Positions 1 through 11,908 of a DNA stretch of 11,908 bases are shown here, one piece after another (the first letter of the stretch is position 1; each line of letters opens with the position of its first letter). Below the pieces are notes generated by a model that was not told where the DNA came from, searched no databases, and saw only the letters and a program-made list of their open reading frames with translations. Origin of the DNA: Octopus sinensis (Eukaryota). The DNA lies in contig NW_021826801.1 of NCBI RefSeq assembly GCF_006345805.1, positions 1-11,908 on the forward strand, read 5' to 3'. The position numbers and the translations under genes are program-made.

Positions 1-124
1 GTTGCTTTAAAGGTCGTCGTTAAAGATTTTTACTTTAAGTAATTCAGATAAATCACATTTAGTAAATTAAAAATAATTTATTTTTCAATAATTTTTGATT
101 ATTTTAAAAATAAAACTTATCTAA

Positions 125-430
125 ATGGAGACAAATTTGAATCCATTTTAGAAAATTCGAATTCAATTTTCACAAGTTCCATTTTCTGCACAATCCAATT
201 GTTCTTATTGGCCAGAGATTTGTTGAATAGAATAAAAGAACGGGTGATTCCTTCAATTCAAGACTTTTATTCTTTGAAAGCAACATTCAAATCTCATCAC
301 CCAGTAGACACCAAGTAGTCTTAATTCCCAGATTGAGACCAAAATGACAGTCGAACGTGTCACATTGCTCGAGTTTGTCATTCTTTGAGGAGGGATTGTT
401 CGTAGACTACCAGGCTAATGGAATGCCATA
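125..430 (+). other. DUF1908-like N-terminal region of the MAST kinase
   Basis: [35 protein letters not shown] resembles the recalled MAST segment FIHHQIVELARDCL..ITSRYFLEL; R.TRLMEC near 405-428 resembles RPARLLECL. Confidence 0.6.
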
Positions 431-2669
431 GTTGGCCTGTTTTTAATGTCTGGAAATTTTGTCTCTTCGGAAAAAAACGCATTTAGTTGACTTGAGTATA
501 AATTGAAACAAACACGGGAAAAATATTTGAAGAACATGTCTTGGGGATGGGACCCGTCGGCAGTGTGGTACCCTATGACGAACCGACTTGTCGTTCAGGA
601 TCCACGTGAAAAGTGATTTTGAGGAAATAAAGACGCTAGCAGAGGGGCTTACGGTTTGTCGGAATAATATTTGTAAGGATTTTATACTCGTGAACCCGTC
701 AAAAGTGGCTTAACTTTGCGATGAAAAAGATTAGGAAAAGTCTGTTGGGTTACGTTATCAAGTCGACCAAGTCTTCACTGAGAGACATTCTCAAATTCAA
801 CGACAATCCGTTTGTGGTCATTTGTTCTGCAGTTTTGAAACTGCGGTTGGTGAGTGGTGATATTGGTAGAGACATTTATGTATGGTAATGCAGATGTGGA
901 GGGTGGTGACTGTGCTGCACTCCTCCAAAAGGTTGGCTCGTTTCCCTTCGATTTGAGTCGGTTGGTCGTCTTTGTGACTGTTTTAGAATATATGTGGCCG
1001 AGACTACTCTCGCATTGGAATACCTCCACTCCTATGAAATCGTCCACAGAGATCTGAAGCCGGACAAGTTGTTGTTTGAGATTACCGTAGTCTGCTGATT
1101 ACTGCAAAGGGACATATAAAACTGACTGATTTTGGACTGTCCAAGATTGGGCTGATTAACAGCGCCATCGTCCAGAACTGTCAGGAGTTTAAGGACATGC
1201 AAGTGTTTGGGACACCGGAATATATTGCCCCCGAAGTGATACTTCAGACAGGATATGGTTGAGGACTTGCTGTCTGACCAATTCAGGAAAGCCGGTCGAT
1301 TTGTGGTCACTGGGGATTATTCTTTTCGAATTTCTCGTGGGGACTGTTCCGTACTTTGGAGAAACTCCCGAAGAACTGTTTTTCCATGTCGTCAATGGTT
1401 GTTTATTCACGTGATGAGTAGAAATATTTGAGTGGCCTCCGAGGCTAATCTGCGCGTGGAAGCAGTGGATATTGTCAACCGACTGCTTCAGCATGACCCA
1501 GTAAAGAGGTTGGGCACTGCCGGACTTGACGAGGTCAGAACCATTTTTAATGTCCAAGATCAAAGAACACTCTTTCGTCGTTGGATTGGAGTGCACTTTT
1601 GTGTCAGAAGGTGAGTTATATTCCCAGTATCAGTGAGGACGATGACGTCAGTTTCTTTGATGGTGCCGACTATTACGTAATCCATAGATCGATCCGACCG
1701 TTTCTCCAACCACGGATCGAATGAGAGTGATGAAGTAACGTCAGACATGTTCAGTTCATTCTTATCTCTATCGCCACTGTATGTAAGTCTGAACATAAAC
1801 TCAAACGTGGGTCGATTTGTGCCATGTTTAGGAGTCGGGTTCGTTCTACAGATATTCCGGCAATCGAGTCCCCCGACGAGTATCTCTTGACCAATCAAGT
1901 CACCCAGTTGACTCTCCTCTCAGTTTTTGCAATTCCTTCGACACCTCCGTCAGTTCTTGCTGTGTGTTAATTAGTTGGGAGATGAGACTCCGAGTGCCAT
2001 AAGATCTCCGTCGACAATATATTGGGACACCGGAAAAAGTTACGGTTTCCCCGATTCCATCTTTCAAAATATCGTCAATCATCAACCCAGAGAGGGAGTG
2101 TAAAAAACTGTACTTTGGTTATTTATATTTTAGCATTGAGTCAGGTCTTCAGTTTTCGTAAAACAAGTCCTTCCACTGCCTCCAACACCTCAAAGACGAA
2201 AAACGTTTCCAGTCCGCGTATGAATGTGGTCATTCACCGTGGACTGTGGGGATTTGGCTTTCGTGTTTTGGCCCTCCCTAAACGCTCGTCTGAATATCTT
2301 AAGCACGTGATTGATGTTGACTAATATGTATAATATGAGTAGTCTGTGAGTGGACCGGCTGTTGATGTTGGTCTTAAAGTTGGGACTGTCATAACGCATA
2401 TCAACGTGACGGACATTACTCGATGTCCCATGTTGATGTTGTAACGTATTTTGATGAAGAATGGTCCTGTGGTTGGTCTATGTTGTGACTCTCAGTTGAG
2501 TCTGTCTATAATCGAGAAGCATAATTCGAGGAGGAATCATTTATATCTTTCTAACAGGTTATCAGTTCATTTCGGAGATGTGAAATCAAGTCGTCGAACG
2601 TTTCCGCTCTTCGAAGGAGGGTTGGAACTATTTGGGTCACTCCTGTGGTATTCTGCTTTATGGAACTGA
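125..2669 (+). CDS. MAST: Microtubule-associated serine/threonine (MAST-family) AGC kinase with C-terminal PDZ domain; multi-exon, about a dozen apparent 1-2 nt indels
   Basis: Hand-spliced translation gives LARDLL..DFYSL and R.TRLMEC (DUF1908-like), [152 protein letters not shown], then a PDZ. The start (ATG at 125) needs a +1 T correction. The end is the nearest in-frame stop and is uncertain (true end could be about 2550). Confidence 0.85.
601..1705 (+). other. AGC kinase catalytic domain plus AGC C-terminal tail (MAST type)
   Basis: Gly-loop GAYG, beta3 lysine (FAMKK), [20 protein letters not shown] and DLWSLG are all present. Hydrophobic-tail segment DDVSFFD. Confidence 0.92.
654..2495 (+). 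other. Series of 13 tiny GT-AG spliceosomal introns
   Basis: 654-677 (24 nt), 846-869 (24), 961-986 (26), 1068-1090 (23), 1258-1286 (29), 1398-1421 (24), 1534-1558 (25), 1663-1687 (25), 1807-1831 (25), 1949-1974 (26), 2110-2133 (24), 2316-2342 (27), 2472-2495 (24). Removal rejoins conserved motifs exactly (KPDN|LL, GYG|KPVD, LSR|IYVAE, FFD|DRSDR). The three linker introns (1807, 1949, 2110) and 2472 are less well constrained. Confidence 0.88.
2215..2520 (+). other. PDZ domain of the MAST kinase
   Basis: [15 protein letters not shown] (GLGF-type loop), [26 protein letters not shown], then SHVDVV..LMKNGPV after indel correction. Confidence 0.8.
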
Positions 2670-3240
2670 CAGTTTGATTTCAAAGTTGGATCATCCGTCT
2701 CAGATTTGTCATATTCTGAACCAAAACTTATTGCTGAACCTAAGATTGATGAAACGTCGTACTGCTGTGATGATTCCAAGCACTCTTGCTAATAGTATTG
2801 TATATATGCTTGCTTCTACTATTTCCTCTATGTGCTAGAGCTAGTTCTTATTACTAACCTCCACCAACTGCTTTTATTTATTTTAGAAAGAATGCTGTTT
2901 CAGTCTTGTTTATTTTAGTTCTCTATTGTTGGCATGAAATTATATTGCAATCAAGTTTCTGCAACGACATATAAACTATAATTCCATTAGTGCCTCACAT
3001 CTATCATTATCTTGAGGTCTTCGACATCTTTAGTTTGGTAATTGTTTGAACTCCAGTGAGGGCACTACGTGGGCGAACTATTTTCAACGTGTTTCGTAAA
3101 ATTCTTTTATGGTAATATTTGCAGGCGTGTTCTGCTCTGTTATTAACATTCAAAATAGAGTAGTAAGTGTGCTATTTCTTCCACAATGTTGGATTAGCCT
3201 CTTTCATTTTCATATTTTTCCAAAAAATAACTGGCATTTT
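2567..3240 (-). CDS. Possible convergent tiny-intron gene, unknown function
   Basis: Protein-like stretches (NIVEEIAHLLLYFE; KDVEDLKIMID; EEIVEASIYTILLARVLGIITAVRRF; [15 protein letters not shown]) separated by candidate introns 2976-2998 (23 nt), 2841-2868 (28 nt, GTTGGT donor) and 2716-2739 (24 nt). No continuous frame can be built without indel corrections. Confidence 0.35.
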
Positions 3241-3357
3241 CGAATTTATTTAAACATAATTAATTCTTTTGAATATTATCTTTTATTCTTTTGACTTTTA
3301 CAAAAAGGATTAATCATCCAAGATGGTATTTTTATTTTTTTTAAACGGAATTGTTTA

Positions 3358-3548
3358 TTACGAAAAAAAGAATTCGGTCAAGTGTTCGAAAGCTTCATGG
3401 ACGGGAATCCGACGCGATCGAGAAGAATTAGAGCGTACTATCGCAAGGGATATCCGCTCGAAAAACCATCTTGATTCACGGGCGTCGCCTGTGATAGCAG
3501 ATATGCGGGACCCGATTCCTGAGCGAAGCTGATTGCCTTACTAATCAA
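3358..3548 (-). mobile_element. 3' remnant of a CRE-like non-LTR retrotransposon (end of REL endonuclease region)
   Basis: LISKAISFAQEIGSRISAITGDARESRWFFERISLAIVRSN...LTEFFFS* (one indel) fits the recalled CRE-type ending ELG.RI...TGD.RE..FL.QRLS.A.QRGN. An A-rich tail follows. Confidence 0.55.
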
Positions 3549-3789
3549 GAATATTTGGAATTTATAATTCAAGAATGTGACAGGTAAGAGGCGGAACCAC
3601 GCCGGAGCCGAAACCAAGTTGTTATTTTAATAAACAATAATTTTTTTGATTTAATTTTCATTGGAAAATCATAATTCGTTAATTAAATTAATTAAATATC
3701 AATAATTAATTATAAATAAATCGCATGTTACAATGGTTTTTATTGGATTATCAAAAGAAATGCTTCAAAAATTAAAATTTATAAAAGGA

Positions 3790-3818
3790 CTAGCCGGCAG
3801 CTCGCTTCGCTCACCGCG
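3790..3818 (-). other. Helitron 3' terminus (subterminal hairpin plus CTAG)
   Basis: Minus strand reads gcggtgagcgaagcgagctgccggCTAG|t, about 90 nt downstream of the helicase stop. Confidence 0.8.
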
Positions 3819-3905
3819 ACCTAGCTCCTGCGGAGGGCCTGTTTCATCAAACAACTATAAGTTTATGTAGATGTATAAAACTACCTGGTTTAATGTAACC
3901 CTATT

Positions 3906-4088
3906 CTATCGCTGTTGATAAACGATGTTTGTCGTCCGTCCTTCCTTGGCATATATGAATAAATTTTCTCTTCTGCCTACCCTCGAGCATCCCACATACA
4001 GCTGTCCATGTGAAAAGCACTCACTCTCTAAAAATAACCCAACTACCTTTAATGACTGTCCCTGGGCCTTGTTATTGTCATTGCACAC
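3906..4088 (-). pseudogene. Helitron PIF1-like helicase, C-terminal fragment
   Basis: AMTINKAQGQSLKVVGL.L...CFSHGQLYVGCSRV (one indel); PIF1 helicase motifs V-VI typical of RepHel proteins. Confidence 0.9.
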
Positions 4089-4180
4089 TTTTTTTTTCAT
4101 TTTTGGGGTTTATTTTTTTTTATATTTAATTTTTTCATTTTTCCTTTGTAATTTCCTTTTTTTCTTTTTTGTTTTTTACT

Positions 4181-4264
4181 GGCGGAAATGGGGCAGGGGG
4201 AGATGCGGCAGGCGGAAATGCGGCAGGCAAGAAAGCGACACACAAAAAAGCGACACACAAAAAG
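4181..4264. repeat. Short motif arrays: 3 x 15-nt ggcggaaatgcggca (degenerate) and 2 x aaagcgacacacaaa
   Basis: Direct reading of 4181-4225 and 4232-4264. Confidence 0.8.
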
Positions 4265-4455
4265 ATTTAATTAATTACCTTATTAAGCTGACCGTTTTTT
4301 CTTCAGCTTCGTTTTTCCTCCTTCGGTTATCTATTTAAAAAATTATTTTGATAATAAAAAAGTTTAGGAAAAGAGGCATACCGAAAATAAATTCTATCTT
4401 TACGAAAAACTCAAGTAATAGTTAATATTTTTACGCAAATTCTTCTGATTGCGCT

Positions 4456-4658
4456 GTCAATGGTGGTAAATTGTGTTAATGGTTGTGCTAATGTGGTTTC
4501 AACTATCAAAGTGTTTTTCAAAATCTGTTAATTGCACACTCTATTCAAGTCGTGCGTCAATTGGTGGTAAATTGTGTTAATGATTGTGCTAATGTGGTTT
4601 CAACTATCAAAGTGGTTTTTCAAAATCTGTTAATTGCACACTCTATTCAAAGTCGTGC
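4456..4658. repeat. Tandem duplication, units of 100 and 103 nt
   Basis: 4456-4555 versus 4556-4658 differ by one substitution and three run-length indels. Confidence 0.95.
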
Positions 4659-4866
4659 AATCTGTGATTGCACATTCTGTCAAAGTCAAATATGATAATA
4701 GCTTTAATTTGATTCATGGTCGATAATGATATATGCATTTAATTTTAAAGAGAAAAACATAGGATGAATGAATTTCTTTATCGCGAATAATTGGGAGTTC
4801 ATCATTGTTAATATTCTCGCTGTCGTTTTCATCAAGGATATTTTAATACGTGAGATTTTTGCCTTG

Positions 4867-5284
4867 AAGGTTTTAATGGACCTCATCATGAATGTCGAGG
4901 ACATTCGCGTTGTTCATTTTAATCAAAATGCAGAAAAATAATTTTTTGATTTTTTGGGGGAAAAGGTTTTAAGGACTTCATCATGTAAGTCGAGGACATT
5001 GTAGTTGTTCATTTTAACCAAAATGCAGAAGAAAATTTTTTGATTTTTTGGCGGGAGGTTTTAAGGACCTCATCATGTAAGTCGAGGACATCGTAGTTGT
5101 TCATTTTAACCAAAATGCAGAAAAATTTTTTTAATTTTTTTGGGGGGGAAGGTTTTAAGGACCTCATCATGTAAGTCGAGGACATCGTAGTTGTTCATTT
5201 TGACCAAAACGCAGAAAAATTTTTTTTATTTTTTTGGGGGGGAAGGTTTTAAGGACCTCATCATGTAAGTCGAGGACATCGTAT
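4867..5284. repeat. About 94-bp minisatellite, about 4.4 copies
   Basis: Unit aaggttttaaggacctcatcatgtaagtcgaggacatcgtagttgttcattttaaccaaaatgcagaaaaa(T-run)..(G-run); starts near 4867, 4963, 5055, 5149 and 5243. Confidence 0.95.
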
Positions 5285-5305
5285 TGCCAATTTGAAGTTG
5301 GGTTG

Positions 5306-5371
5306 CACACACAGACAGACAGACAGACACACAGACAGACACACAGACAGACAGACAAGACACACACACAC
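5306..5371. repeat. Mixed (ACAG)n/(AC)n microsatellite
   Basis: cacacacagacagacagacagacacacagacagac... next to the putative Helitron 5' end. Confidence 0.95.
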
Positions 5372-5399
5372 CATACCATTTTATTATTAAGACTATCAA

Positions 5400-6135
5400 A
5401 GAAAGAACGGTTTCGCATCAGAAGCTTCTCAAAGATTTTGCAATTTGACCGAGAAAAAGAAAAAGTCTTTATTTTAGAAAAAGGGAATTTTTGAGGTTCT
5501 TTGCTACTGAAGAAGCTGAATTAAAGATGAAAACTATTGAGGTAAACTTATTGATTAGAATTTTAAGGCTGAGCACAATTCTAACCATTTTGGTAGAAAT
5601 AAGCTTCTTAGTCTATTATCATCTAAAATACAGTCCGACCTCTAATTGGGGCGCACCTCCAGGGTTGGGGCACCTCTTTTTTGGGGAAAACTCTGTTTTG
5701 GGGCATTATAAATATAAAGAGATGGATATCATCAACCAGCGAATCAAACAATCACTTCGAGCAATATCATAAAATACTGAAAAAAATTGTTTATGACTAT
5801 AACATGGCCGTACATGAAACAACTCGACATAAACCTCTTAAGGTGTTTATGCGCGTTGGACATATGGATTCAAAAAGTGCGGATCTAATTGAAGCGCTTT
5901 ATCAATTCGAGGGAGATGACGAAAACGAGGAAATAGATTATAAAGTCATTGAAAATCTCAAAAAAGCGGGAGAAAAAATGAGTAAAAAAAGAAGATGGAA
6001 ATTTGACGAAGAAGATATTGAAGTGGAAGACTCAGTAATTTTGAGAAACGACATCGATGCAAACAGCAGAAAGTTCCTTATATGACGGAATATCTGCCAA
6101 AAAATATACCGTCACTGAAAAAATGGTTATTTTTG
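5400..6135 (+). mobile_element. Degenerate Ginger/KRBA2-like integrase (DDE transposase) relic, copy 1
   Basis: N-terminal LRFFATEEAELK..HNSNHFGRNKLLSLL (integrase zinc-binding H..H half), then LKKIVYDYNMAVHETTRHKP (end of RNase H-fold core) and a C-terminal VILRNDID..YDGI segment. Most of the core is absent. Confidence 0.65.
5631..5680 (+). mobile_element. Solo Tc1/mariner-pogo-like terminal inverted repeat interrupting integrase copy 1
   Basis: TA|CAGTCCGACCTC start with the internal motif ttgggg(cg)cacctc repeated twice. No partner end seen. Confidence 0.4.
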
Positions 6136-6760
6136 TTCTATCAAAGATGGAGTTCGCTCCCGAGGAAGTAGAAGAAAAAAACTGTTTATTGAAAATCTCC
6201 ATTTAAAAAATGGACATCCAGGTCGAGACAAACTGCTTTTTCTCCTTAAAGATACTGTTTATGGATCTTGTAGGAATGAGGTAATGTCAGTTCTCAAATC
6301 ATGCTGCCAATGTAACATGACACTACGAAGCATATTCCATTCAACATTTTTATGGGAGTGGGATATGAAAAAAAACTAAATGATTACATTATGCAGTCTT
6401 TATTGGCTTTTAACTAGTAATTTTTTTTTTCGAAAAGAGCTTATGGGGCATAACAGTGATGATACAGAAAAAGAGGATTTGGAAAATGACAGTGATGACG
6501 AACTTGAGAAAAAGAGAAAGGAAGCTTTCAAAAACATTGTCTCTTGCGGTATAAAATGAATAAAAAAAGAAAATGGAAAAACGATGAGGATGGGCGATCT
6601 TGTACTTCTACGTACAGATAATGACACCAATCGGCCAAGATATCCGTTATATGACGGAATTGATTCCAGCAAACACAAGATCATCAGTGTGAAAAACGAT
6701 CAGTATTTTTTAGAAGGAGAAAATGGTGAGATTGTACCAAAAAAGTTTATTTTTTAACTT
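6136..6760 (+). mobile_element. Degenerate Ginger/KRBA2-like integrase relic, copy 2
   Basis: FIENLHLKNGHPGRDKLLFLLKDTVYG...VLKSCCQC (complete H2C2) joined directly to HDTTKHIPFNIFMG, then GDLVLLRTDND..YDGI, collinear with copy 1. Confidence 0.7.
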
Positions 6761-6839
6761 TTAGAAACGAAAAGATTTTATAATAATTGATGAAACAGAT
6801 ATCCGAAGGAAAAGTTTTGTAGTGATTCTAATTGGAAGC

Positions 6840-7180
6840 ATTCGCTTTCCAACAAAAACAGGGCTGACGGATCGTTCCTTAAGTTCGTGGAATCTAGAAG
6901 AAGGAAATGTTCCGGGATCCTGAGAAGCCTTATACGCTTCCATCTCTCCCCAGACACCTTATCTTCATCTATAAGGCGACTGTAGAACCAGTCCTTATCT
7001 ATGGACATGAAGGTTGGTACCCTACAGACGAGAGAAATCGCATAATCACCAAACTGGAGAAAACAAAGCGCTTTGCGATTAAACTGGCGTATAAGCTACG
7101 GCTTGATCAGGATCTCCCAGAGAGCTAGACGAACAAACTTAAAACATTCGGCAAGTCCTCTGCTCATTGCAAAGGGCATG
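6840..7180 (+). mobile_element. Non-LTR (LINE) reverse transcriptase, post-palm/thumb fragment
   Basis: KCSGILRSL...IFIYKATVEPVLIYGHEGWYP...KLEKTKRFAIK fits the LINE pattern IYK..V.P.L.YG...W.P...KLE..QR.A. Clade not assignable. Confidence 0.7.
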
Positions 7181-7506
7181 AGAAGTGAAAAGGAAAGCAA
7201 GGAGGAGGCATTCGGTGTCTCGATTTTAAATAAAACCTTTTCTAATAACTATTCTCTTTCGGTTGCTAAGTTAATAAAATCTGTTCTGTTCTTCTGATCA
7301 TGTATAGTTTTGGTAAGATACCTTCCATTACAATGTTCTGAACTCCGTGTTCTTTTTTTATTTGTATTCATCTTTGTCGTTCGTGTCAAAGATGTTTAAC
7401 AAATGATTAAAGATGATTAATGTAGATCATCACCCCGGACGATATAAACGGGCCGGACGCTATAACACACCACAATTATTGTTATAAATTTTTGAAAAGT
7501 GGCTCA

Positions 7507-7578
7507 TGTCTGGACTGTGACATCAATTTTGAAACAAATGTCAAATTTTCCAAACATCAAAAAGATAGTTCTCGATGC
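7507..7578 (+). other. Isolated zinc-finger-like coding fragment
   Basis: CLDCDINFETNVKFSKHQKDSSRC = C-x2-C-x3-F-x5-F-x2-H-x6-C, just downstream of a TIR-like motif at 7431-7466. Confidence 0.35.
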
Positions 7579-8426
7579 CAGAAAAAATGCATTAACTTGT
7601 AAAAATCCACCTTTTTGTGATGTTGGTGCAATGCGATATAGCAAGAGAGTAGACACGCAGAAAAACAGAGAGTATCAAAGACTTCATTTTACTAAATGTC
7701 TCCTACTGATAAATTTTAGTTTTATTTGGTCCTTTTTTAATTCTTCGTGATTTTTAATAGATTTCTTTTGATAGATAAATCAAAATAAAGATGGAGTAAA
7801 CAAATTCAAAAAGGTATAAAAAAACAATATAAAAATGTCAAATTATAAGAGATTGAGTTTGAAGGAATAAAATCAAAATAAATGATAAAAATGATAAAAT
7901 TTCAAATTCTGAAATCAGGAAATGAAAGTTCATAATGATTTATTCCTTACAAATCAAATTAAATAAGAATGTAGCAACAACACATAAACTACTAACCAAC
8001 TAAGCCAACCACGTGTATCAGCGTGTTATAATTTATTAGGCTTACCTTTAAAAATAGGTTAACCATAGGTAATAATTTTAATTTTTTTTATATTGGAGAG
8101 CCTCAATACATCCGTCCCCTCTTCCACGTGCAAACGACATTATGAATGTTTGAACATGAAAACTAATACGATTCCTAAAAATTGGTTTTCTCTTATTATT
8201 GATATTATATTTTTAATTTTTTATGGCCTTCAACACACTATTGTTTAAATATTTAACTCCACTTCAGCGGAAAATAGCATCTTAGAATATCCGCACCCTG
8301 CTGAGAATAACAACAGTTATATGATAAGTATGGCAACCAAAAGTCATTAAAGTCATATCAAAAAAGAATTGTTAGTTTATTATTTCCATCATTTTAAATT
8401 ATATTATCACTCCAGCTCGCTGATAT

Positions 8427-8843
8427 TCACTCTCTTCTCTTGGAAGAAGAGCATATTTTCAGCTGCCTCTTACTCCCCATTACCACATCTGATTCAACCA
8501 TTGCATCTTCTTTAGCATTCATTGGGTTGTCTTCACCTTTGCATGCCATCTCCACATACCGGTTGGAAGCAGAAGCGTATTCTTCACCAGATACCTTCAT
8601 TCCGTGCTTGTGTTCGATCATCATACTCTCGAGCGTTCTTTTCAGTACAACGGATTGGATGTATTTCCTCGTTCCTGCTTCAATAGATAGTTTCTTCATA
8701 TAATTTTTGAAGCATTTTGAGACAACTCCATCCCATGTCATAACCTCAGGAATTATTTTTACTTGACAGCTATACAGAAGCGAAAGCTCGCTTGCCAGTA
8801 GATCATACTTGTGACACTTTTCAACCTCCACTTGCTTGATGCG
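8427..8843 (-). mobile_element. 5'-truncated REL-type (R2/R4/NeSL group) non-LTR retrotransposon, C-terminal endonuclease region
   Basis: KQVEVEKCHKYDLLASEL....VKIIPEVMTWDGVV...YIQSVVLKRTLES: E.EK..KY..LA.EL..IIP motif that follows the PD-(D/E)xK core. Confidence 0.8.
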
Positions 8844-8845
8844 AA

Positions 8846-9467
8846 AAACTTAAAGAATATTTCAAAGGGAGTCAAATATTTTTAGTAATAGACGAAACCC
8901 AACATTCTTTAAAAATATGTGAACATTATTGCTGGGAAGATTGACAACCCAACCAATATTTATTTAATTGACTGTATTTGTGTTGAGACGTGTGATGCAA
9001 GTTCAATTTGTCAAACAATTGATGATTGCTTACGAAATTACCAAGTTGGGAGAAAAAACTTTGTTTTGTTGTTAACTGATGCTGCACCGTATATGATGTC
9101 AGCCGCAACTAGCATACGTATAATTTATCCGAATATGATTCACCTTAAAGCGAAGGAATAAAGAAATGTGAAGATAATTTTTATACTGTTAAAGATGCTA
9201 TTCAATGTATTAATTCTATCGACTTTGGGGAAGATCCATGTGAGATTGCACAATATTTAAAAAAAGAACAAATTCAATGCCATGGAATAGCATTCAAGAA
9301 GCTAATTTGAGAAATTTTCTTCTTGAATTATTCGTGTATTTATGGAAATGTCCGGGAACCACATTATCTGTCGAAAGAAGTTTCTCGATGCTAAATAAAC
9401 TTTTAGCAAAAACTTAAAGGATGAAAATATTAAACCTTATTTAATGTGTTATTTTAATAAATTTTAA
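8846..9467 (+). mobile_element. hAT-superfamily transposase relic (CGGBP1-like / DUF659 type), internally deleted
   Basis: IFLVIDET (first D), LLTDAAPYM (second D), SVERSFSML (E, dimerisation region). The sequence jumps near 9145 from YPNMIHL to the C-terminal region, losing the CxxH motif and insertion domain. Confidence 0.8.
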
Positions 9468-9481
9468 TTCTTAATGATATA

Positions 9482-10934
9482 CACCCCTCGTCACCGAAAA
9501 CCGGACAAGCCATTTTTTATGATTTTATTAATAAATACGAAAATCAAAAACTTACGCTTAATATTTTTACTTAATAATAATAATTGTGTAATAATTATTA
9601 ATTTTACTATTTTAGAACTAATATTTAAAGCAGAATTTCAATTACTTAAGACATGTAAAACCGGACAAAACTTTTATAGATCTAAAAGTCGTTGAAAAGA
9701 AGCTAAAATGTATAGTCAAAGAAGAAGTCACCTTTCAAATTTCCTGAAAGGACAATTATTGCATTTTATAATCATAATATGACTTATCGAATGATTTCTG
9801 CAAGTATAGGAGTCCCAAAATCAACTGTATCAGATGTGATTCAGAAATTCAAAAAACTGGATCAATTAACATACATCCGGGAACTGAAAGAAAGAAAATA
9901 TTGATAGAGGAAGAAATTTTGATTTTAGTAGAACTATCAAATAATACCCCTCATAAAAGTGCCAAAACTCTTAGCATCGAAATTAAAACTATGTTCAAAA
10001 AAAAATTTTAACAAGAATAGTATCTCGAATTTTAAATAAGAAAAGATTATATGGCCGAGCTGCTAAAAGAAAACCTCCTTTATCCACAAAAAATATAATT
10101 TTAAGACGTGAAATTACGAAATCATTTTTAAGCATTTCCGACGAGACATGGAAGTCGGTAATTTTTACTGATGAATGGTCTTTTGATATTTTTAATGTCA
10201 ATAAGCATCAAATAGTGTATAGAGAAAATGGTTCTGCATACAAAAATGCAATATTATCCCAACTGTAAAATTCGGTGGTGGAAAAGTAATGGTCTGGGGC
10301 AGTTTCTCGTATAACGGAGTCGGTAATTCTTGTTTTTTATTGATGAAATTCTTTATAGCGCAAAATATATTAATATTTTATCTAATAATATATTCGAATG
10401 TGCCAAAAAATTCGGGATAGACTCATTTATTTTACAACAGGATAATGCACCTTGCCATAAATCTAAAATGATACAAGATTATATAAAGAAAAAAACATTA
10501 TTTACTTCAATGGCCTGCTCGATCACCGGATCTAAACCCGATAGAACATCTATGGACAGAAATGCAGAGAGAATTATCAAAAAATGTAGTCAAAAACAAA
10601 AATGAAAAACGTTATAAAATTTTCAGTGCAAATGTGGACATATTAACTACTAAATGACTTGTTTTTATTTTGTCCGGTTTTACATGTCTTAAGTAAATTG
10701 AAATTCTGCTTTAAATATTAGTTCTATAATAGTATAATTAATAATTATTACACAATTATTATTATTAAGTAAAAATTTTTTTTTTTGAAAAACACTTTGA
10801 TATTTTTTTTTTTTTTGACAAACCAACCAATAATACAAGTTAATTAATTAAATATTAAGCTTAAGTTTTTGATTTTTCATATTTAATTAATAAAATCATC
10901 AAAAATAGCTTGTCCGGTTTTCAGTGACTAGATG
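9482..10934 (+). mobile_element. Tc1-family transposon with long IR-DR-type terminal inverted repeats
   Basis: TA|CACCCCTCGTCACCGAAAACCGGACAAGC at left. Left TIR 9482-9670 matches the reverse complement of 10668-10934, and each TIR carries outer and inner AAAACCGGACAA repeats. The right TIR has an insertion of about 80 nt and a degenerate tip. Confidence 0.9.
9708..10646 (+). pseudogene. Tc1 DD34E transposase (frameshifted, C-terminus shortened)
   Basis: HTH GVPKSTVSDVI, WKSVIFTDE, TVKFGGGKVMVWG, FILQQDNAPCH, WPARSPDLNPIEHLW. D-E spacing is 34 after restoring two homopolymer bases. Confidence 0.92.
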
Positions 10935-11019
10935 AAAAACTAAAAATAAGCAAATCTAAATATGTAAACACCATTTTTATTTGGAATTGTCACCTGCATC
11001 TAGGATGAGGTAAAAAATT

Positions 11020-11908
11020 GTTGAAAAAAACTGGCAACTCATGAAAAAAGAAAAGAATTCCGGAGGGACAATGTGTGTTTTGAACTTAACCGAAGGCAGT
11101 TTTACAGAAACTTGACTGAGAAAAAGAAAAATACGCAGTCTATGTTTGACCAGAGTCAGTGTCTCTCATTTCCGGATTGGAGCAAAACGCAAAAAGTCTG
11201 CAACTAATCTTGAAGGGTTGAGTGGCAAAGCTAAGCTGCTTGACGGAATTGATGGCTATCGTTACCTTGAAGTATTGGAAGACAAGGTTAGCAGGTTCTG
11301 AAGAATGACACGATGAACTCAATATCAAATCCAGTCGAGAAGAGATTTAATAGTCTGGCAGACTCGAAGCTGAATTCTGAAAATTTTTTCAAGCCTGTCA
11401 ATGAGCATGCATTATCGCTGTATAATTTCTACATCGGGCTCATTGATATCGAACCATGCGAATTTGAGAGCATCGACAAGAATGTGCGCAAGATTTTGAT
11501 ACGCCACCAAATACCATGAAATCTGGAAACAAACATAGACTTTATCTTTCAAGAGACCGACTAGGAAGAGGATTGGTTTCTGTGGTGCATAAAACCGAGC
11601 GAATGCTTCTTGAATTCCTCAAGGACATTAGATGAAGGCTTCCTATTGTTTGAGGAGAGAAGCAATCCTGAAGGCCGTCAGATTCAAGAAAACTCATATG
11701 CCCACTATCAAGGAATTCCTATGCAGAAAGTATCATTTGCAACTTCGGAAAGCCTCAAACTGAATGTTCTGAAGGATTTGCAAGGAAAGCACTTAATTTA
11801 AAGATATGAAAAAAGCCGCTTCACTAGATTTTGTTTAATTGCTATAATGATTTGTACGTGGATCTGAAGAATCGTCCTGGTGGTTATCTCATGAGAACAA
11901 CTCTCCAA
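11020..11908 (+). mobile_element. REL-type non-LTR retrotransposon relic with RT core deleted; runs off the window
   Basis: HEKRKEFRRDNVCFELNRRQFYRNL (pre-RT region) joined at about 11172 to GLE..KKSATN...YRYLEVLEDK (last RT motif), then KLNSENFFKPVNEHALSLYN and RLYLSRDRLGRGLVSV. Confidence 0.8.

What the first reader, a model, noticed from the sequence alone, without database searches (positions are those of the whole stretch)
846..2495. Non-standard 5' splice-site preference: GTTG instead of GTRAG
Seen: donors read GTTTGT, GTTGGT, GTTGGT, GTTGTT, GTTGAG, GTTGTT, GTCAGA, GTGCCG, GTGGGT, GTCAGT, GTACTT, GTTGAC, GTTGGT. Seven of 13 are GTTG, 8 of 13 have T at +3, and only one has A at +3. A candidate intron of the neighbouring gene also starts GTTGGT. 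Polypyrimidine tracts are weak (e.g. gatgagtag, attggtag), while TRAY branch-like motifs (ctgac, gtgac, ttaat, gtaat) sit a few bases before the AG. Known: the donor is read by the U1 5' end and the U6 ACAGAGA box, which normally favour +3 purine and +4 A. Inferred: this lineage may have compensatory changes in U1 or U6, or may define introns mainly by length and branch point.
Basis: partly seen in the sequence, partly recalled or inferred. Interest (0 to 1): 0.7.

Follow-up and report, generated by a model that had tools for sequence, protein, structure and literature searches.

The report
GTTG-start mini-introns in a kinase gene
A MAST-type kinase gene from an animal with 23-29 base introns, probably a dicyemid parasite of octopus, starts most of its introns with GTTG instead of the usual GTAAG; the bias is real in this gene, but nothing here shows it holds for the whole genome.

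Summary
The gene on the + strand (about 537-2800) encodes a MAST-family kinase domain plus a PDZ domain.

Protein homology forces nine introns of 23-29 nt. Seven of the nine begin GTTG and none has A at +3. Only 9.5% of exonic GT sites are followed by TG, so P is about 2e-6. The other four proposed introns cannot be verified. One of them has a canonical GTAAGT alternative at 1783.

Eight of the nine introns carry a TRAY branch motif. Its A lies 15-20 nt from the 5' end and 7-9 nt from the AG (shuffle P < 5e-5). There is no polypyrimidine enrichment.

The coding frame is broken about 13 times by missing bases. Repeats in the window show the same deletion bias against near-identical 'Octopus sinensis' contigs. 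The window is therefore an unpolished long-read assembly, not evidently a pseudogene.

Repeats match only Octopus sinensis contigs, and O. sinensis is the host of Dicyema japonicum. Published dicyemid donor data show only 'GTa', the weakest 5' signal known, so GTTG is not an established lineage trait.

The window holds no snRNA gene, and I found no other sequence from this organism. The U1/U6 idea is untested.

The parts
537..2800 (+). MAST-family Ser/Thr kinase gene (kinase domain plus PDZ). The 5' limit is the first ATG before the kinase domain and the 3' limit is approximate. The frame is broken about 13 times by missing bases.
   Evidence: best database hits are MAST kinases at up to 62% identity. 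Pfam Pkinase E = 2.5e-52 covering profile positions 9-262 of 263. HRDLKPDN, DFG, APE, the FAMKK lysine and the ERDIL glutamate are all intact.
609..1662 (+). Kinase-domain coding region (exons 678-845, 870-960, 987-1067, 1091-1257, 1287-1397, 1422-1533, 1559-1662)
   Evidence: Spliced alignment to the MAST3-like protein P0007, score 819
2226..2519 (+). PDZ-domain coding region, split by two introns
   Evidence: Best PDB matches are the PDZ domains of MAST3, MAST2 and MAST4; Pfam PDZ E = 4e-7; spliced alignment
846..869 (+). Intron, 24 nt, phase 0, GTTGGT...GTGAT...TAG. A canonical GTGAGT 4 nt downstream (850) is not the homology-consistent donor.
   Evidence: joins FCSFETA to RHLCMVM; branch A at position 15, 9 nt from the 3' end
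961..986 (+). Intron, 26 nt, phase 2, GTTGGT...GTGAC...TAG
1068..1090 (+). Intron, 23 nt, phase 2, GTTGTT...GATTAC...TAG. It has no exact TRAY; TTAC puts an A at position 17.
   Evidence: joins HRDLKPD-N to LLIT
1258..1286 (+). Intron, 29 nt, phase 1, GTTGAG...CTGAC...CAG
   Evidence: joins QTGY-G to KPVD
1398..1421 (+). Intron, 24 nt, phase 1, GTTGTT...GTGAT...TAG
1534..1558 (+). Intron, 25 nt, phase 0, GTCAGA...TTAAT...AAG
1663..1687 (+). Intron, 25 nt, phase 1, GTGCCG...GTAAT...TAG
2316..2342 (+). Intron, 27 nt, phase 0, GTTGAC...ATAAT...TAG, inside the PDZ domain
   Evidence: the best model needs no frameshift. The alternative 2328-2350 scores lower and needs one.
2472..2495 (+). Intron, 24 nt, phase 0, GTTGGT...GTGAC...CAG. 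It has no in-frame stop. An in-frame alternative donor, GTGGTT, lies at 2469.
   Evidence: Removal restores the canonical PDZ spacing KNGPV-LSLSI
654..677 (+). Probable intron with an uncertain donor (GTTTGT at 654 or GTCGGA at 658)
   Evidence: an intron is needed between GAYG and the beta-3 strand, but neighbouring frameshifts prevent a unique boundary
1783..2133 (+).
   Evidence: there is no homology constraint, the frames do not close without a further frameshift, and none of the three has a TRAY at the usual place

Best explanation
These are genuine GT-AG spliceosomal introns of the ultra-short class (23-29 nt). They interrupt a functional MAST-family kinase gene of an animal with miniaturised introns, most probably a dicyemid parasite of octopus. 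The gene sits in a long-read assembly that has lost about 0.7% of its bases.

The G|GTTG(G/T)T bias at the donors is real, not a composition effect. The likely working model is a minimal intron architecture. Most of the recognition information lies in four things: the GT and AG dinucleotides, a TRAY branch site at a fixed distance of about 17 nt from the 5' end and 6-9 nt from the AG, and a narrow length window. Pairing of +3/+4 with the canonical U1 5' end contributes little. U at +3 and G at +4 are then tolerated or mildly preferred by this organism's machinery.

Shown here: the intron positions, the donor bias, the branch-motif placement, the lack of a pyrimidine tract, and the assembly-error origin of the frameshifts. 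Inferred: that the introns are spliced as modelled, that the source is a dicyemid, and that the bias extends beyond this gene.
For: Nine introns are forced by homology, and their removal joins conserved kinase and PDZ motifs exactly.

7/9 start GTTG against a 9.5% background (P = 2e-6). Intron-shaped decoys elsewhere in the window start GTTG only 2/26 times.

TRAY has its A 15-20 nt from the 5' end and 7-9 nt from the AG in 8/9 introns; no shuffle out of 20,000 reached 8. Pyrimidines are not enriched.

Canonical-U1 complementarity barely distinguishes true donors from 117 exonic GT sites.

At 846 homology requires GTTGGT although GTGAGT lies 4 nt downstream. That donor would make a 20-nt intron, shorter than any verified one.

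All catalytic motifs are intact, and Pkinase matches full length.

Every frame break is most simply read as missing bases. Against near-identical repeat copies the window lacks single bases 12 times versus 3 in the other copies, and 9 of the 12 are at homopolymers.

Only dicyemids and myxobolid myxozoans are known to have animal introns under 30 nt, with no pyrimidine tract and A residues as the likely branch point (PMC13644364). The window's repeats match only Octopus sinensis contigs, and O. sinensis is the host from which D. japonicum was collected (PMC6736024).
Against: This is one gene with nine introns, and there is no transcript evidence.

Published dicyemid data do not show GTTG. 41 D. 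acuticephalum introns gave the weakest 5' signal known (0.5 bits) and no branch signature (PMC2483917). D. japonicum logos reduce to 'GTa' (PMC13644364). If the source is one of these species, this gene is an outlier, and the model does not explain why.

The species of origin was not established.

Three intron-shaped GT..TRAY..AG decoys lie inside conserved exons (1139, 1509, 1627). The proposed signals alone therefore do not fully specify the introns.
Confidence: 0.5

Rival explanations
1. The whole lineage has re-tuned 5' splice-site reading. For example, a U1 5' end changed at the two positions that normally pair with +3/+4, or a changed U6 ACAGAGA box, would make G|GUUGGU the cognate site.
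For: The consensus seen here is -1 G 7/9, +3 U 7/9, +4 G 7/9, +5 G 4/9 and +6 U 5/9. That is what a U1 with two substitutions would pair with. True donors fit this variant consensus far better than decoys do, but that test is circular. A bias this strong in a randomly sampled gene is more likely if the preference is broad.
Against: No snRNA gene is available. The U1 5' end is almost invariant in eukaryotes (general knowledge). Published dicyemid and myxobolid logos show 'GTa' and very low 5' information (PMC13644364, PMC2483917). Two verified introns of this same gene (GTCAGA, GTGCCG) do not fit.
Confidence: 0.12
2. A sampling or selection effect. The organism's donors are nearly unconstrained after GT, and this gene drew GTTG often by chance. 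The reader noticed it because it looked odd.
For: Dicyemid 5' sites carry almost no information beyond GT (PMC2483917). Only one gene is available.
Against: P = 2e-6 against the local background, and about 3e-5 after allowing for all 16 dinucleotides. Even at a genome-wide GTTG frequency of 25%, 7/9 has P about 1e-3 (my own calculation, no tool call). -1 G and +5/+6 GT also lean the same way.
Confidence: 0.2
3. Gene-specific regulation. This kinase gene keeps deliberately weak, unusual donors so that its introns are retained or spliced under the control of a dedicated factor, as with regulated non-consensus 5' sites in yeast meiotic genes.
For: The bias appears gene-wide while the published genome-wide logo differs. 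Three of the four introns whose length is a multiple of three carry in-frame stops, so retention would be non-productive (read from the sequences).
Against: There is no expression data. No such mechanism is known in these animals. Two introns of the gene do not share the motif.
Confidence: 0.1
4. The locus is not expressed at all. It is either a decaying pseudogene or a fragment of parasite DNA (or a chimeric join) inside a host-octopus assembly, so the 'donors' are relics under no present constraint.
For: There are about 13 frame breaks. The gene lies next to repeats up to 98% identical to Octopus sinensis contigs. No transcript-derived protein closer than 62% identity is in the database. No DUF1908 domain was detected upstream within the window.
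Against: The breaks are mostly read as missing bases, several of them at homopolymer or dinucleotide runs, and they occur at the same rate as in the flanking repeats. There is no nonsense substitution, and all catalytic motifs are intact. Relic status would not create a GTTG bias; it would erode one.
Confidence: 0.08

Closest known systems
Ultra-short spliceosomal introns of dicyemids (Dicyema japonicum, D. acuticephalum, Dicyema sp.)
   Same: Metazoan genes with intron density kept and introns of about 25 nt (mean 26.2 nt, median 27 nt; PMC2222250, PMC6543705). GT-AG ends and no pyrimidine tract, with A residues near the 3' end as the presumed branch point (PMC13644364). Repeat-rich genome of about 37% GC, host Octopus sinensis (PMC6736024).
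   Different: Published donors carry almost no information beyond GT ('GTa'; 0.5 bits) and no branch-site signature (PMC2483917, PMC13644364). Here 7/9 donors are GTTG, none has A at +3, and 8/9 introns have a well-placed TRAY.
Ultra-short introns of myxobolid myxozoans (Henneguya salminicola, Thelohanellus kitauei, Myxobolus)
   Same: Median 22-27 nt, reduced splice signals, and a branch-like A run whose distance from the AG grows with intron length, which implies a fixed distance from the 5' end (PMC13644364).
   Different: The donor logo is 'GTa'. The hosts are fish and annelids, whereas this window's repeats tie it to octopus.
Tiny introns of ciliates and of the Bigelowiella nucleomorph
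   Same: Length-restricted introns of 15-35 nt with little sequence information (PMC2483917, PMC13644364).
   Different: Their 5' sites are GT(A), and they are not metazoan. This gene is a metazoan-type MAST kinase with a PDZ domain.
Canonical metazoan U2-type 5' splice site (AG|GTRAGT)
   Same: GT-AG ends, -1 G in 7/9, and +5 G/+6 T kept in the three GTTGGT sites.
   Different: +3 is a purine in only 1/9, +4 is A in only 1/9, and there is no polypyrimidine tract.
U12-type (minor) introns
   Same: The branch site lies very close to the 3' splice site and there is no polypyrimidine tract.
   Different: The defining /RTATCCTY donor and TCCTTRAY branch box are absent from all nine introns (sequences).

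Membership tests
U2-type GT-AG spliceosomal intron | GT at the 5' end and AG at the 3' end; removal restores a continuous conserved reading frame | tested here: met
   9/9 introns; spliced alignments
U2-type GT-AG spliceosomal intron | Branch-site motif (yTRAy) upstream of the AG | tested here: met
   8/9 with TRAY, branch A 7-9 nt from the 3' end; shuffle P < 5e-5
U2-type GT-AG spliceosomal intron | Donor complementary to the U1 5' end (GTRAGT) | tested here: not met
   +3 purine 1/9 and +4 A 1/9. Pairing score 4.8 vs 4.2 for exonic decoys, p = 0.05
U2-type GT-AG spliceosomal intron | Polypyrimidine tract before the AG | tested here: not met
   5-8 pyrimidines in 12 positions, close to the 55% T+C of the intron interiors
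U2-type GT-AG spliceosomal intron | Actually removed from the mRNA | not testable with these tools
   No transcript data. No same-species protein or contig was found.
Ultra-short animal introns (dicyemid / myxobolid type) | Introns mostly under 30 nt in a narrow length range, in a metazoan gene | tested here: met
   23-29 nt, n = 9, in a MAST kinase gene
Ultra-short animal introns (dicyemid / myxobolid type) | 5' signal reduced to GT(a) | tested here: not met
   0/9 A at +3; T 7/9 at +3 and G 7/9 at +4, against 'GTa' in PMC13644364
Ultra-short animal introns (dicyemid / myxobolid type) | The source organism is a dicyemid or a myxobolid | tested here: inconclusive
   Repeats match only Octopus sinensis contigs, at up to 98%, and O. 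sinensis is the host of D. japonicum (PMC6736024). No direct taxonomic marker was found.
U12-type intron | /RTATCCTY donor and TCCTTRAY branch box | tested here: not met
   Absent from all nine intron sequences
MAST (microtubule-associated Ser/Thr kinase) family | AGC-type kinase domain followed by a PDZ domain | tested here: met
   Pkinase E = 2.5e-52 and PDZ E = 4e-7. Best hits are MAST kinases and MAST3/2/4 PDZ structures.
MAST (microtubule-associated Ser/Thr kinase) family | N-terminal DUF1908 domain | tested here: inconclusive
   Aligning the last ~35 residues of DUF1908 (from P0090) to 1-720 gave only noise upstream of 540. The domain may lie outside the window or be lost.

The most novel reading that the evidence does not exclude
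The source organism, an octopus-associated animal with miniaturised introns, uses G|GUUGGU as its cognate 5' splice site. Either its U1 snRNA 5' end has changed at the two positions that read +3/+4, or it selects donors without U1 pairing, by a ruler from the branch site. This would be a natural re-coding of the most conserved RNA-RNA contact in splicing.
Probability: 0.1. Interest if true: 0.8.

Novelty: new variant of a known kind. Interest (0 to 1): 0.45.

Why it matters
Introns under 30 nt test how little sequence a spliceosome needs. Published work on the two animal lineages that have them reports almost no 5' information beyond GT. This gene shows a sharp non-canonical donor (GTTG, never A at +3) together with a precisely placed branch motif.

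If that held genome-wide, the organism would read its 5' splice sites differently from all characterised animals. The co-evolution of U1/U6 with splice sites would then be directly testable.

If it does not hold genome-wide, the locus is still a clear worked example of minimal intron architecture. It is also a warning that this assembly carries about 0.7% deletion errors, and repeats that are either host-derived or contaminant.

Tried and rejected
1. Looking for the same organism elsewhere, to build a larger intron set. All attempts failed:
- exact look-ups of two window ORFs;
- a protein search with the kinase domain (best hit 62%);
- a search with antisense and species-specific ORFs, which would hit only the same locus (no hit);
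- a JGI metagenome scan (best hit 65%);
- exact-DNA scans of prokaryotic genome contigs and viral contigs.

2. Looking for snRNA genes in the window and in about 100 kb of related octopus-assembly loci. Only a sub-threshold mir-202 match and tRNAs turned up.

3. Checking intron-position conservation in metagenomic MAST loci. Those genes were intron-poor, so the comparison was uninformative.

4. Looking for a DUF1908 exon upstream. Only noise.

5. Resolving the linker introns (1783-2133). No model closes the frame without assuming another deletion.

6. Ideas rejected:
- U12-type introns (no defining boxes);
- a composition artefact (exonic and intronic backgrounds of 8-10%);
- homopolymer errors creating GTTG (the errors seen are single-base deletions, about 0.7% per base);
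- the donor at 850 (GTGAGT), because it destroys the RHLCMVM hinge motif;
- the 'neighbour gene' GTTGGT intron (it lies inside a continuous retroelement ORF).
Full report
WHAT IS IN THE WINDOW

Positions about 537-2800 on the + strand encode a MAST-family protein kinase. The three-frame translation shows the kinase motifs: SRGAYG, FAMKKI, ERDIL, HRDLKPDN, TDFGLSK and IAPEV. It also shows a PDZ domain ([14 protein letters not shown]...), all split by very short GT..AG segments.

A database search with the joined exons returned MAST kinases only, with a best identity of 62%. Pfam gives Pkinase E = 2.5e-52 over the full profile and PDZ E = 4e-7. The closest solved structures to the PDZ part are the MAST3, MAST2 and MAST4 PDZ domains.

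The rest of the window (2900-11908) is transposon debris. It holds a Helitron-type helicase tail, a 95-nt tandem repeat, integrase pieces, LINE reverse-transcriptase tails, a hAT fragment and a Tc1/mariner copy with inverted repeats. GC is 0.43-0.46 in the gene and 0.24-0.39 elsewhere.

THE GENE MODEL

I wrote a protein-to-DNA aligner that allows GT/GC-AG introns of 15 nt or more and frameshifts.

Against a MAST3-like protein it places seven unambiguous introns in the kinase domain: 846-869, 961-986, 1068-1090, 1258-1286, 1398-1421, 1534-1558 and 1663-1687. One more lies near 654/658-677, and its donor cannot be fixed. Against MAST PDZ sequences it places 2316-2342 and supports 2472-2495.

Each secure intron sits between exactly abutting conserved residues, for example HRDLKPD-N|LLIT, QTGY-G|KPVD and FFD|DRS. 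Lengths are 23-29 nt.

The linker between the kinase and the PDZ domain (about 1700-2225) is unconserved. The frames do not close without a further frameshift, and none has a branch motif at the usual place. A textbook GTAAGT at 1783 is an equal-phase alternative to the 1807 donor.

THE FRAME BREAKS ARE ASSEMBLY ERRORS

The alignments need about 13 frameshifts: at about 614, 633, 682, 696, 748, 780, 820, 894, 1439, 1577, 2418 and 2444, plus at least one in the linker. The aligner reads nine of the twelve located ones as missing bases, and the other three (614, 682, 2444) can also be read that way. Several sit at homopolymer or dinucleotide runs.

There is no nonsense substitution, and every catalytic motif is intact.

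An independent check comes from repeats in the window that are 88-98% identical to copies in Octopus sinensis contigs. There the window lacks single bases 12 times, against 3 for the other copies, and 9 of the 12 are at homopolymers. The rate is about 0.7% per base in both the repeats and the gene.

The window is therefore an unpolished long-read consensus. The gene is probably intact in the organism. Such errors cannot turn GTAAG into GTTG.

THE OBSERVATION

Restricted to the nine homology-forced introns the pattern is stronger: 7/9 GTTG, 0/9 A at +3, and -1 G in 7/9. Three are GTTGGT and two are GTTGTT.

The background is 11 of 116 exonic GT sites followed by TG (9.5%). Intron-interior composition gives 8.3%, and the window at large gives 6-8%. 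Binomial P = 2e-6 and Fisher P = 1.2e-5.

Of 26 intron-shaped GT..TRAY..AG matches outside the gene, two start GTTG.

8/9 introns carry T[AG]A[CT] with the A 15-20 nt (mostly 17) from the 5' end and 7-9 nt from the 3' end. None of 20,000 shuffles reached 8. The ninth intron has TTAC with an A at position 17.

Pyrimidines are not enriched before the AG.

The GTTGGT at 7013, the likeliest site of the 'candidate intron of the neighbouring gene', lies inside an uninterrupted retroelement ORF.

HOW IT PROBABLY WORKS

Pairing to a canonical U1 5' end hardly separates real donors from 117 exonic GT sites (mean 4.8 vs 4.2 paired positions, p = 0.05).

At 846 the donor that preserves the RHLCMVM hinge motif is GTTGGT. 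A perfect GTGAGT lies 4 nt downstream, but it would give a 20-nt intron with the branch A only 11 nt away, shorter than any verified intron.

Together with the fixed branch position and the narrow lengths, this points to a minimal architecture. GT, a TRAY branch site at a set distance, AG and a length window carry the information. Positions +3/+4 are not read by canonical U1 pairing.

Three exonic decoys fit the same shape (1139, 1509, 1627), so something more must contribute. The GTTG preference may be part of it.

Whether U1 or U6 has changed cannot be said. Neither the window nor about 100 kb of related loci contain an snRNA gene.

WHERE IT COMES FROM

A LINE-tail ORF (8427-8831, minus strand) hit only three proteins in 5.8 billion, all annotated as Octopus sinensis. 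The contigs carrying them share at least five repeat segments with the window, at 68-98% identity.

No annotated octopus MAST protein is close to this gene, so the gene itself is not an octopus gene.

Among animals, introns under 30 nt are known only from dicyemids and myxobolid myxozoans (PMC13644364). Dicyemids live in octopus kidneys, and D. japonicum was collected from O. sinensis. Its assembly merged Illumina with PacBio RS II contigs, has GC 36.7% and is 49% repeats. Its authors state that octopus cells could not be fully removed (PMC6736024).

The most economical reading is dicyemid DNA. I could not decide among three explanations for the shared repeats:
- the O. sinensis contigs are dicyemid contamination;
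- the window's right half is host DNA or a chimeric join;
- transposons have moved between host and parasite.

COMPARISON WITH WHAT IS KNOWN

Ultra-short animal introns, their missing pyrimidine tract and an A-rich branch region at a fixed distance from the donor are all published (PMC13644364, PMC2222250, PMC6543705).

A GTTG donor is not published. D. acuticephalum introns (n = 41) gave the weakest 5' signal known, 0.5 bits, and no branch signature (PMC2483917). D. japonicum and myxobolid logos are summarised as 'GTa' (PMC13644364). So GTTG is not an established trait of the presumed lineage.

Three options remain: this gene is an outlier, the source is a species with different preferences, or annotation-based logos blur a real signal.

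A 7/9 draw has P about 1e-3 even if GTTG made up a quarter of all donors (my own calculation, no tool call). A preference broader than this one gene is therefore plausible, but it is unproven.

VERDICT

The snRNA half is untested, and the claim about the lineage is open and in tension with the literature.

I rate it a possible new variant of a known kind (ultra-short introns), of moderate interest. It becomes high interest only if a genome-wide logo or an altered U1 confirms it.

Noticed in passing
window 600-2500 (for example 633, 696, 748, 780, 820, 894, 1439, 1577, 2418, 2444) and 3786-5283: The sequence has lost single bases at about 0.7% of positions, often at homopolymers. This shows as about 13 frame breaks in an otherwise well-conserved kinase gene, and as 12 one-base gaps against 3 when the window's repeats are aligned to near-identical copies. 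It is the signature of an unpolished long-read consensus.
   Followed up: yes
window 3389-3542, 3786-4085, 4178-5333, 7394-7498, 8541-8843, 10246-10548 vs L001-L006 (GCA_006345805.1 contigs VCDQ01002631, VCDQ01003741, VCDQ01009738, VCDQ01013470): The window's repeats are 68-98% identical to repeats in contigs of the Octopus sinensis assembly. They include a Helitron-type helicase tail at 98%. The LINE-tail ORF has no other protein relatives in the database. The kinase gene itself has no close octopus relative. This is either dicyemid contamination of the octopus assembly, host DNA or a chimera in a parasite assembly, or transposon exchange between host and parasite.
   Followed up: partly
window 846-855: Tandem donors GTTG|GTGAGT. 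The canonical GTGAGT at 850 is bypassed by the homology-consistent model. Using it would shift the frame, lose the RHLCMVM hinge motif and give a 20-nt intron.
   Followed up: yes
window 748 and 780: Two frame breaks (-1 and -2 bases) sum to 3. Frame 2 (first base 481) therefore stays open across 706-870, while the conserved QVDQVFTER motif is readable only in the other frame between the two breaks.
   Followed up: partly
Neither version has a well-placed TRAY.
   Followed up: partly
window 846-869, 1398-1421, 2316-2342, 2472-2495: Three of the four introns whose length is a multiple of three contain an in-frame stop codon. Retention of those would truncate the protein. Only 2472-2495 could be read through.
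   Followed up: no
window 9480-10930: A Tc1/mariner-type transposase remnant, frame-broken, is flanked by long near-perfect inverted repeats (about 9595-9660 and 10660-10730) that differ by a single T in a homopolymer. An outer pair of inverted AT-rich segments suggests a nested insertion.
   Followed up: no
window 4856-5283 and 5310-5360: A tandem repeat of about 95 nt is followed by a (CAGA)n-like microsatellite. The same arrangement recurs in the Octopus sinensis loci next to the LINE, so it is probably part of one composite element.
   Followed up: partly
L001-L003 and L004-L005: The Octopus sinensis loci are themselves large segmental repeats: blocks of roughly 7-13 kb at 97-100% identity, about 13.6 kb apart on one contig and also found on another.
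   Followed up: no
window 1-536: I detected no N-terminal DUF1908 exon, which MAST kinases normally have. The kinase domain is preceded by an ATG at 537 and AT-rich sequence. The gene may be N-terminally shortened, or it may continue beyond the window.
   Followed up: partly
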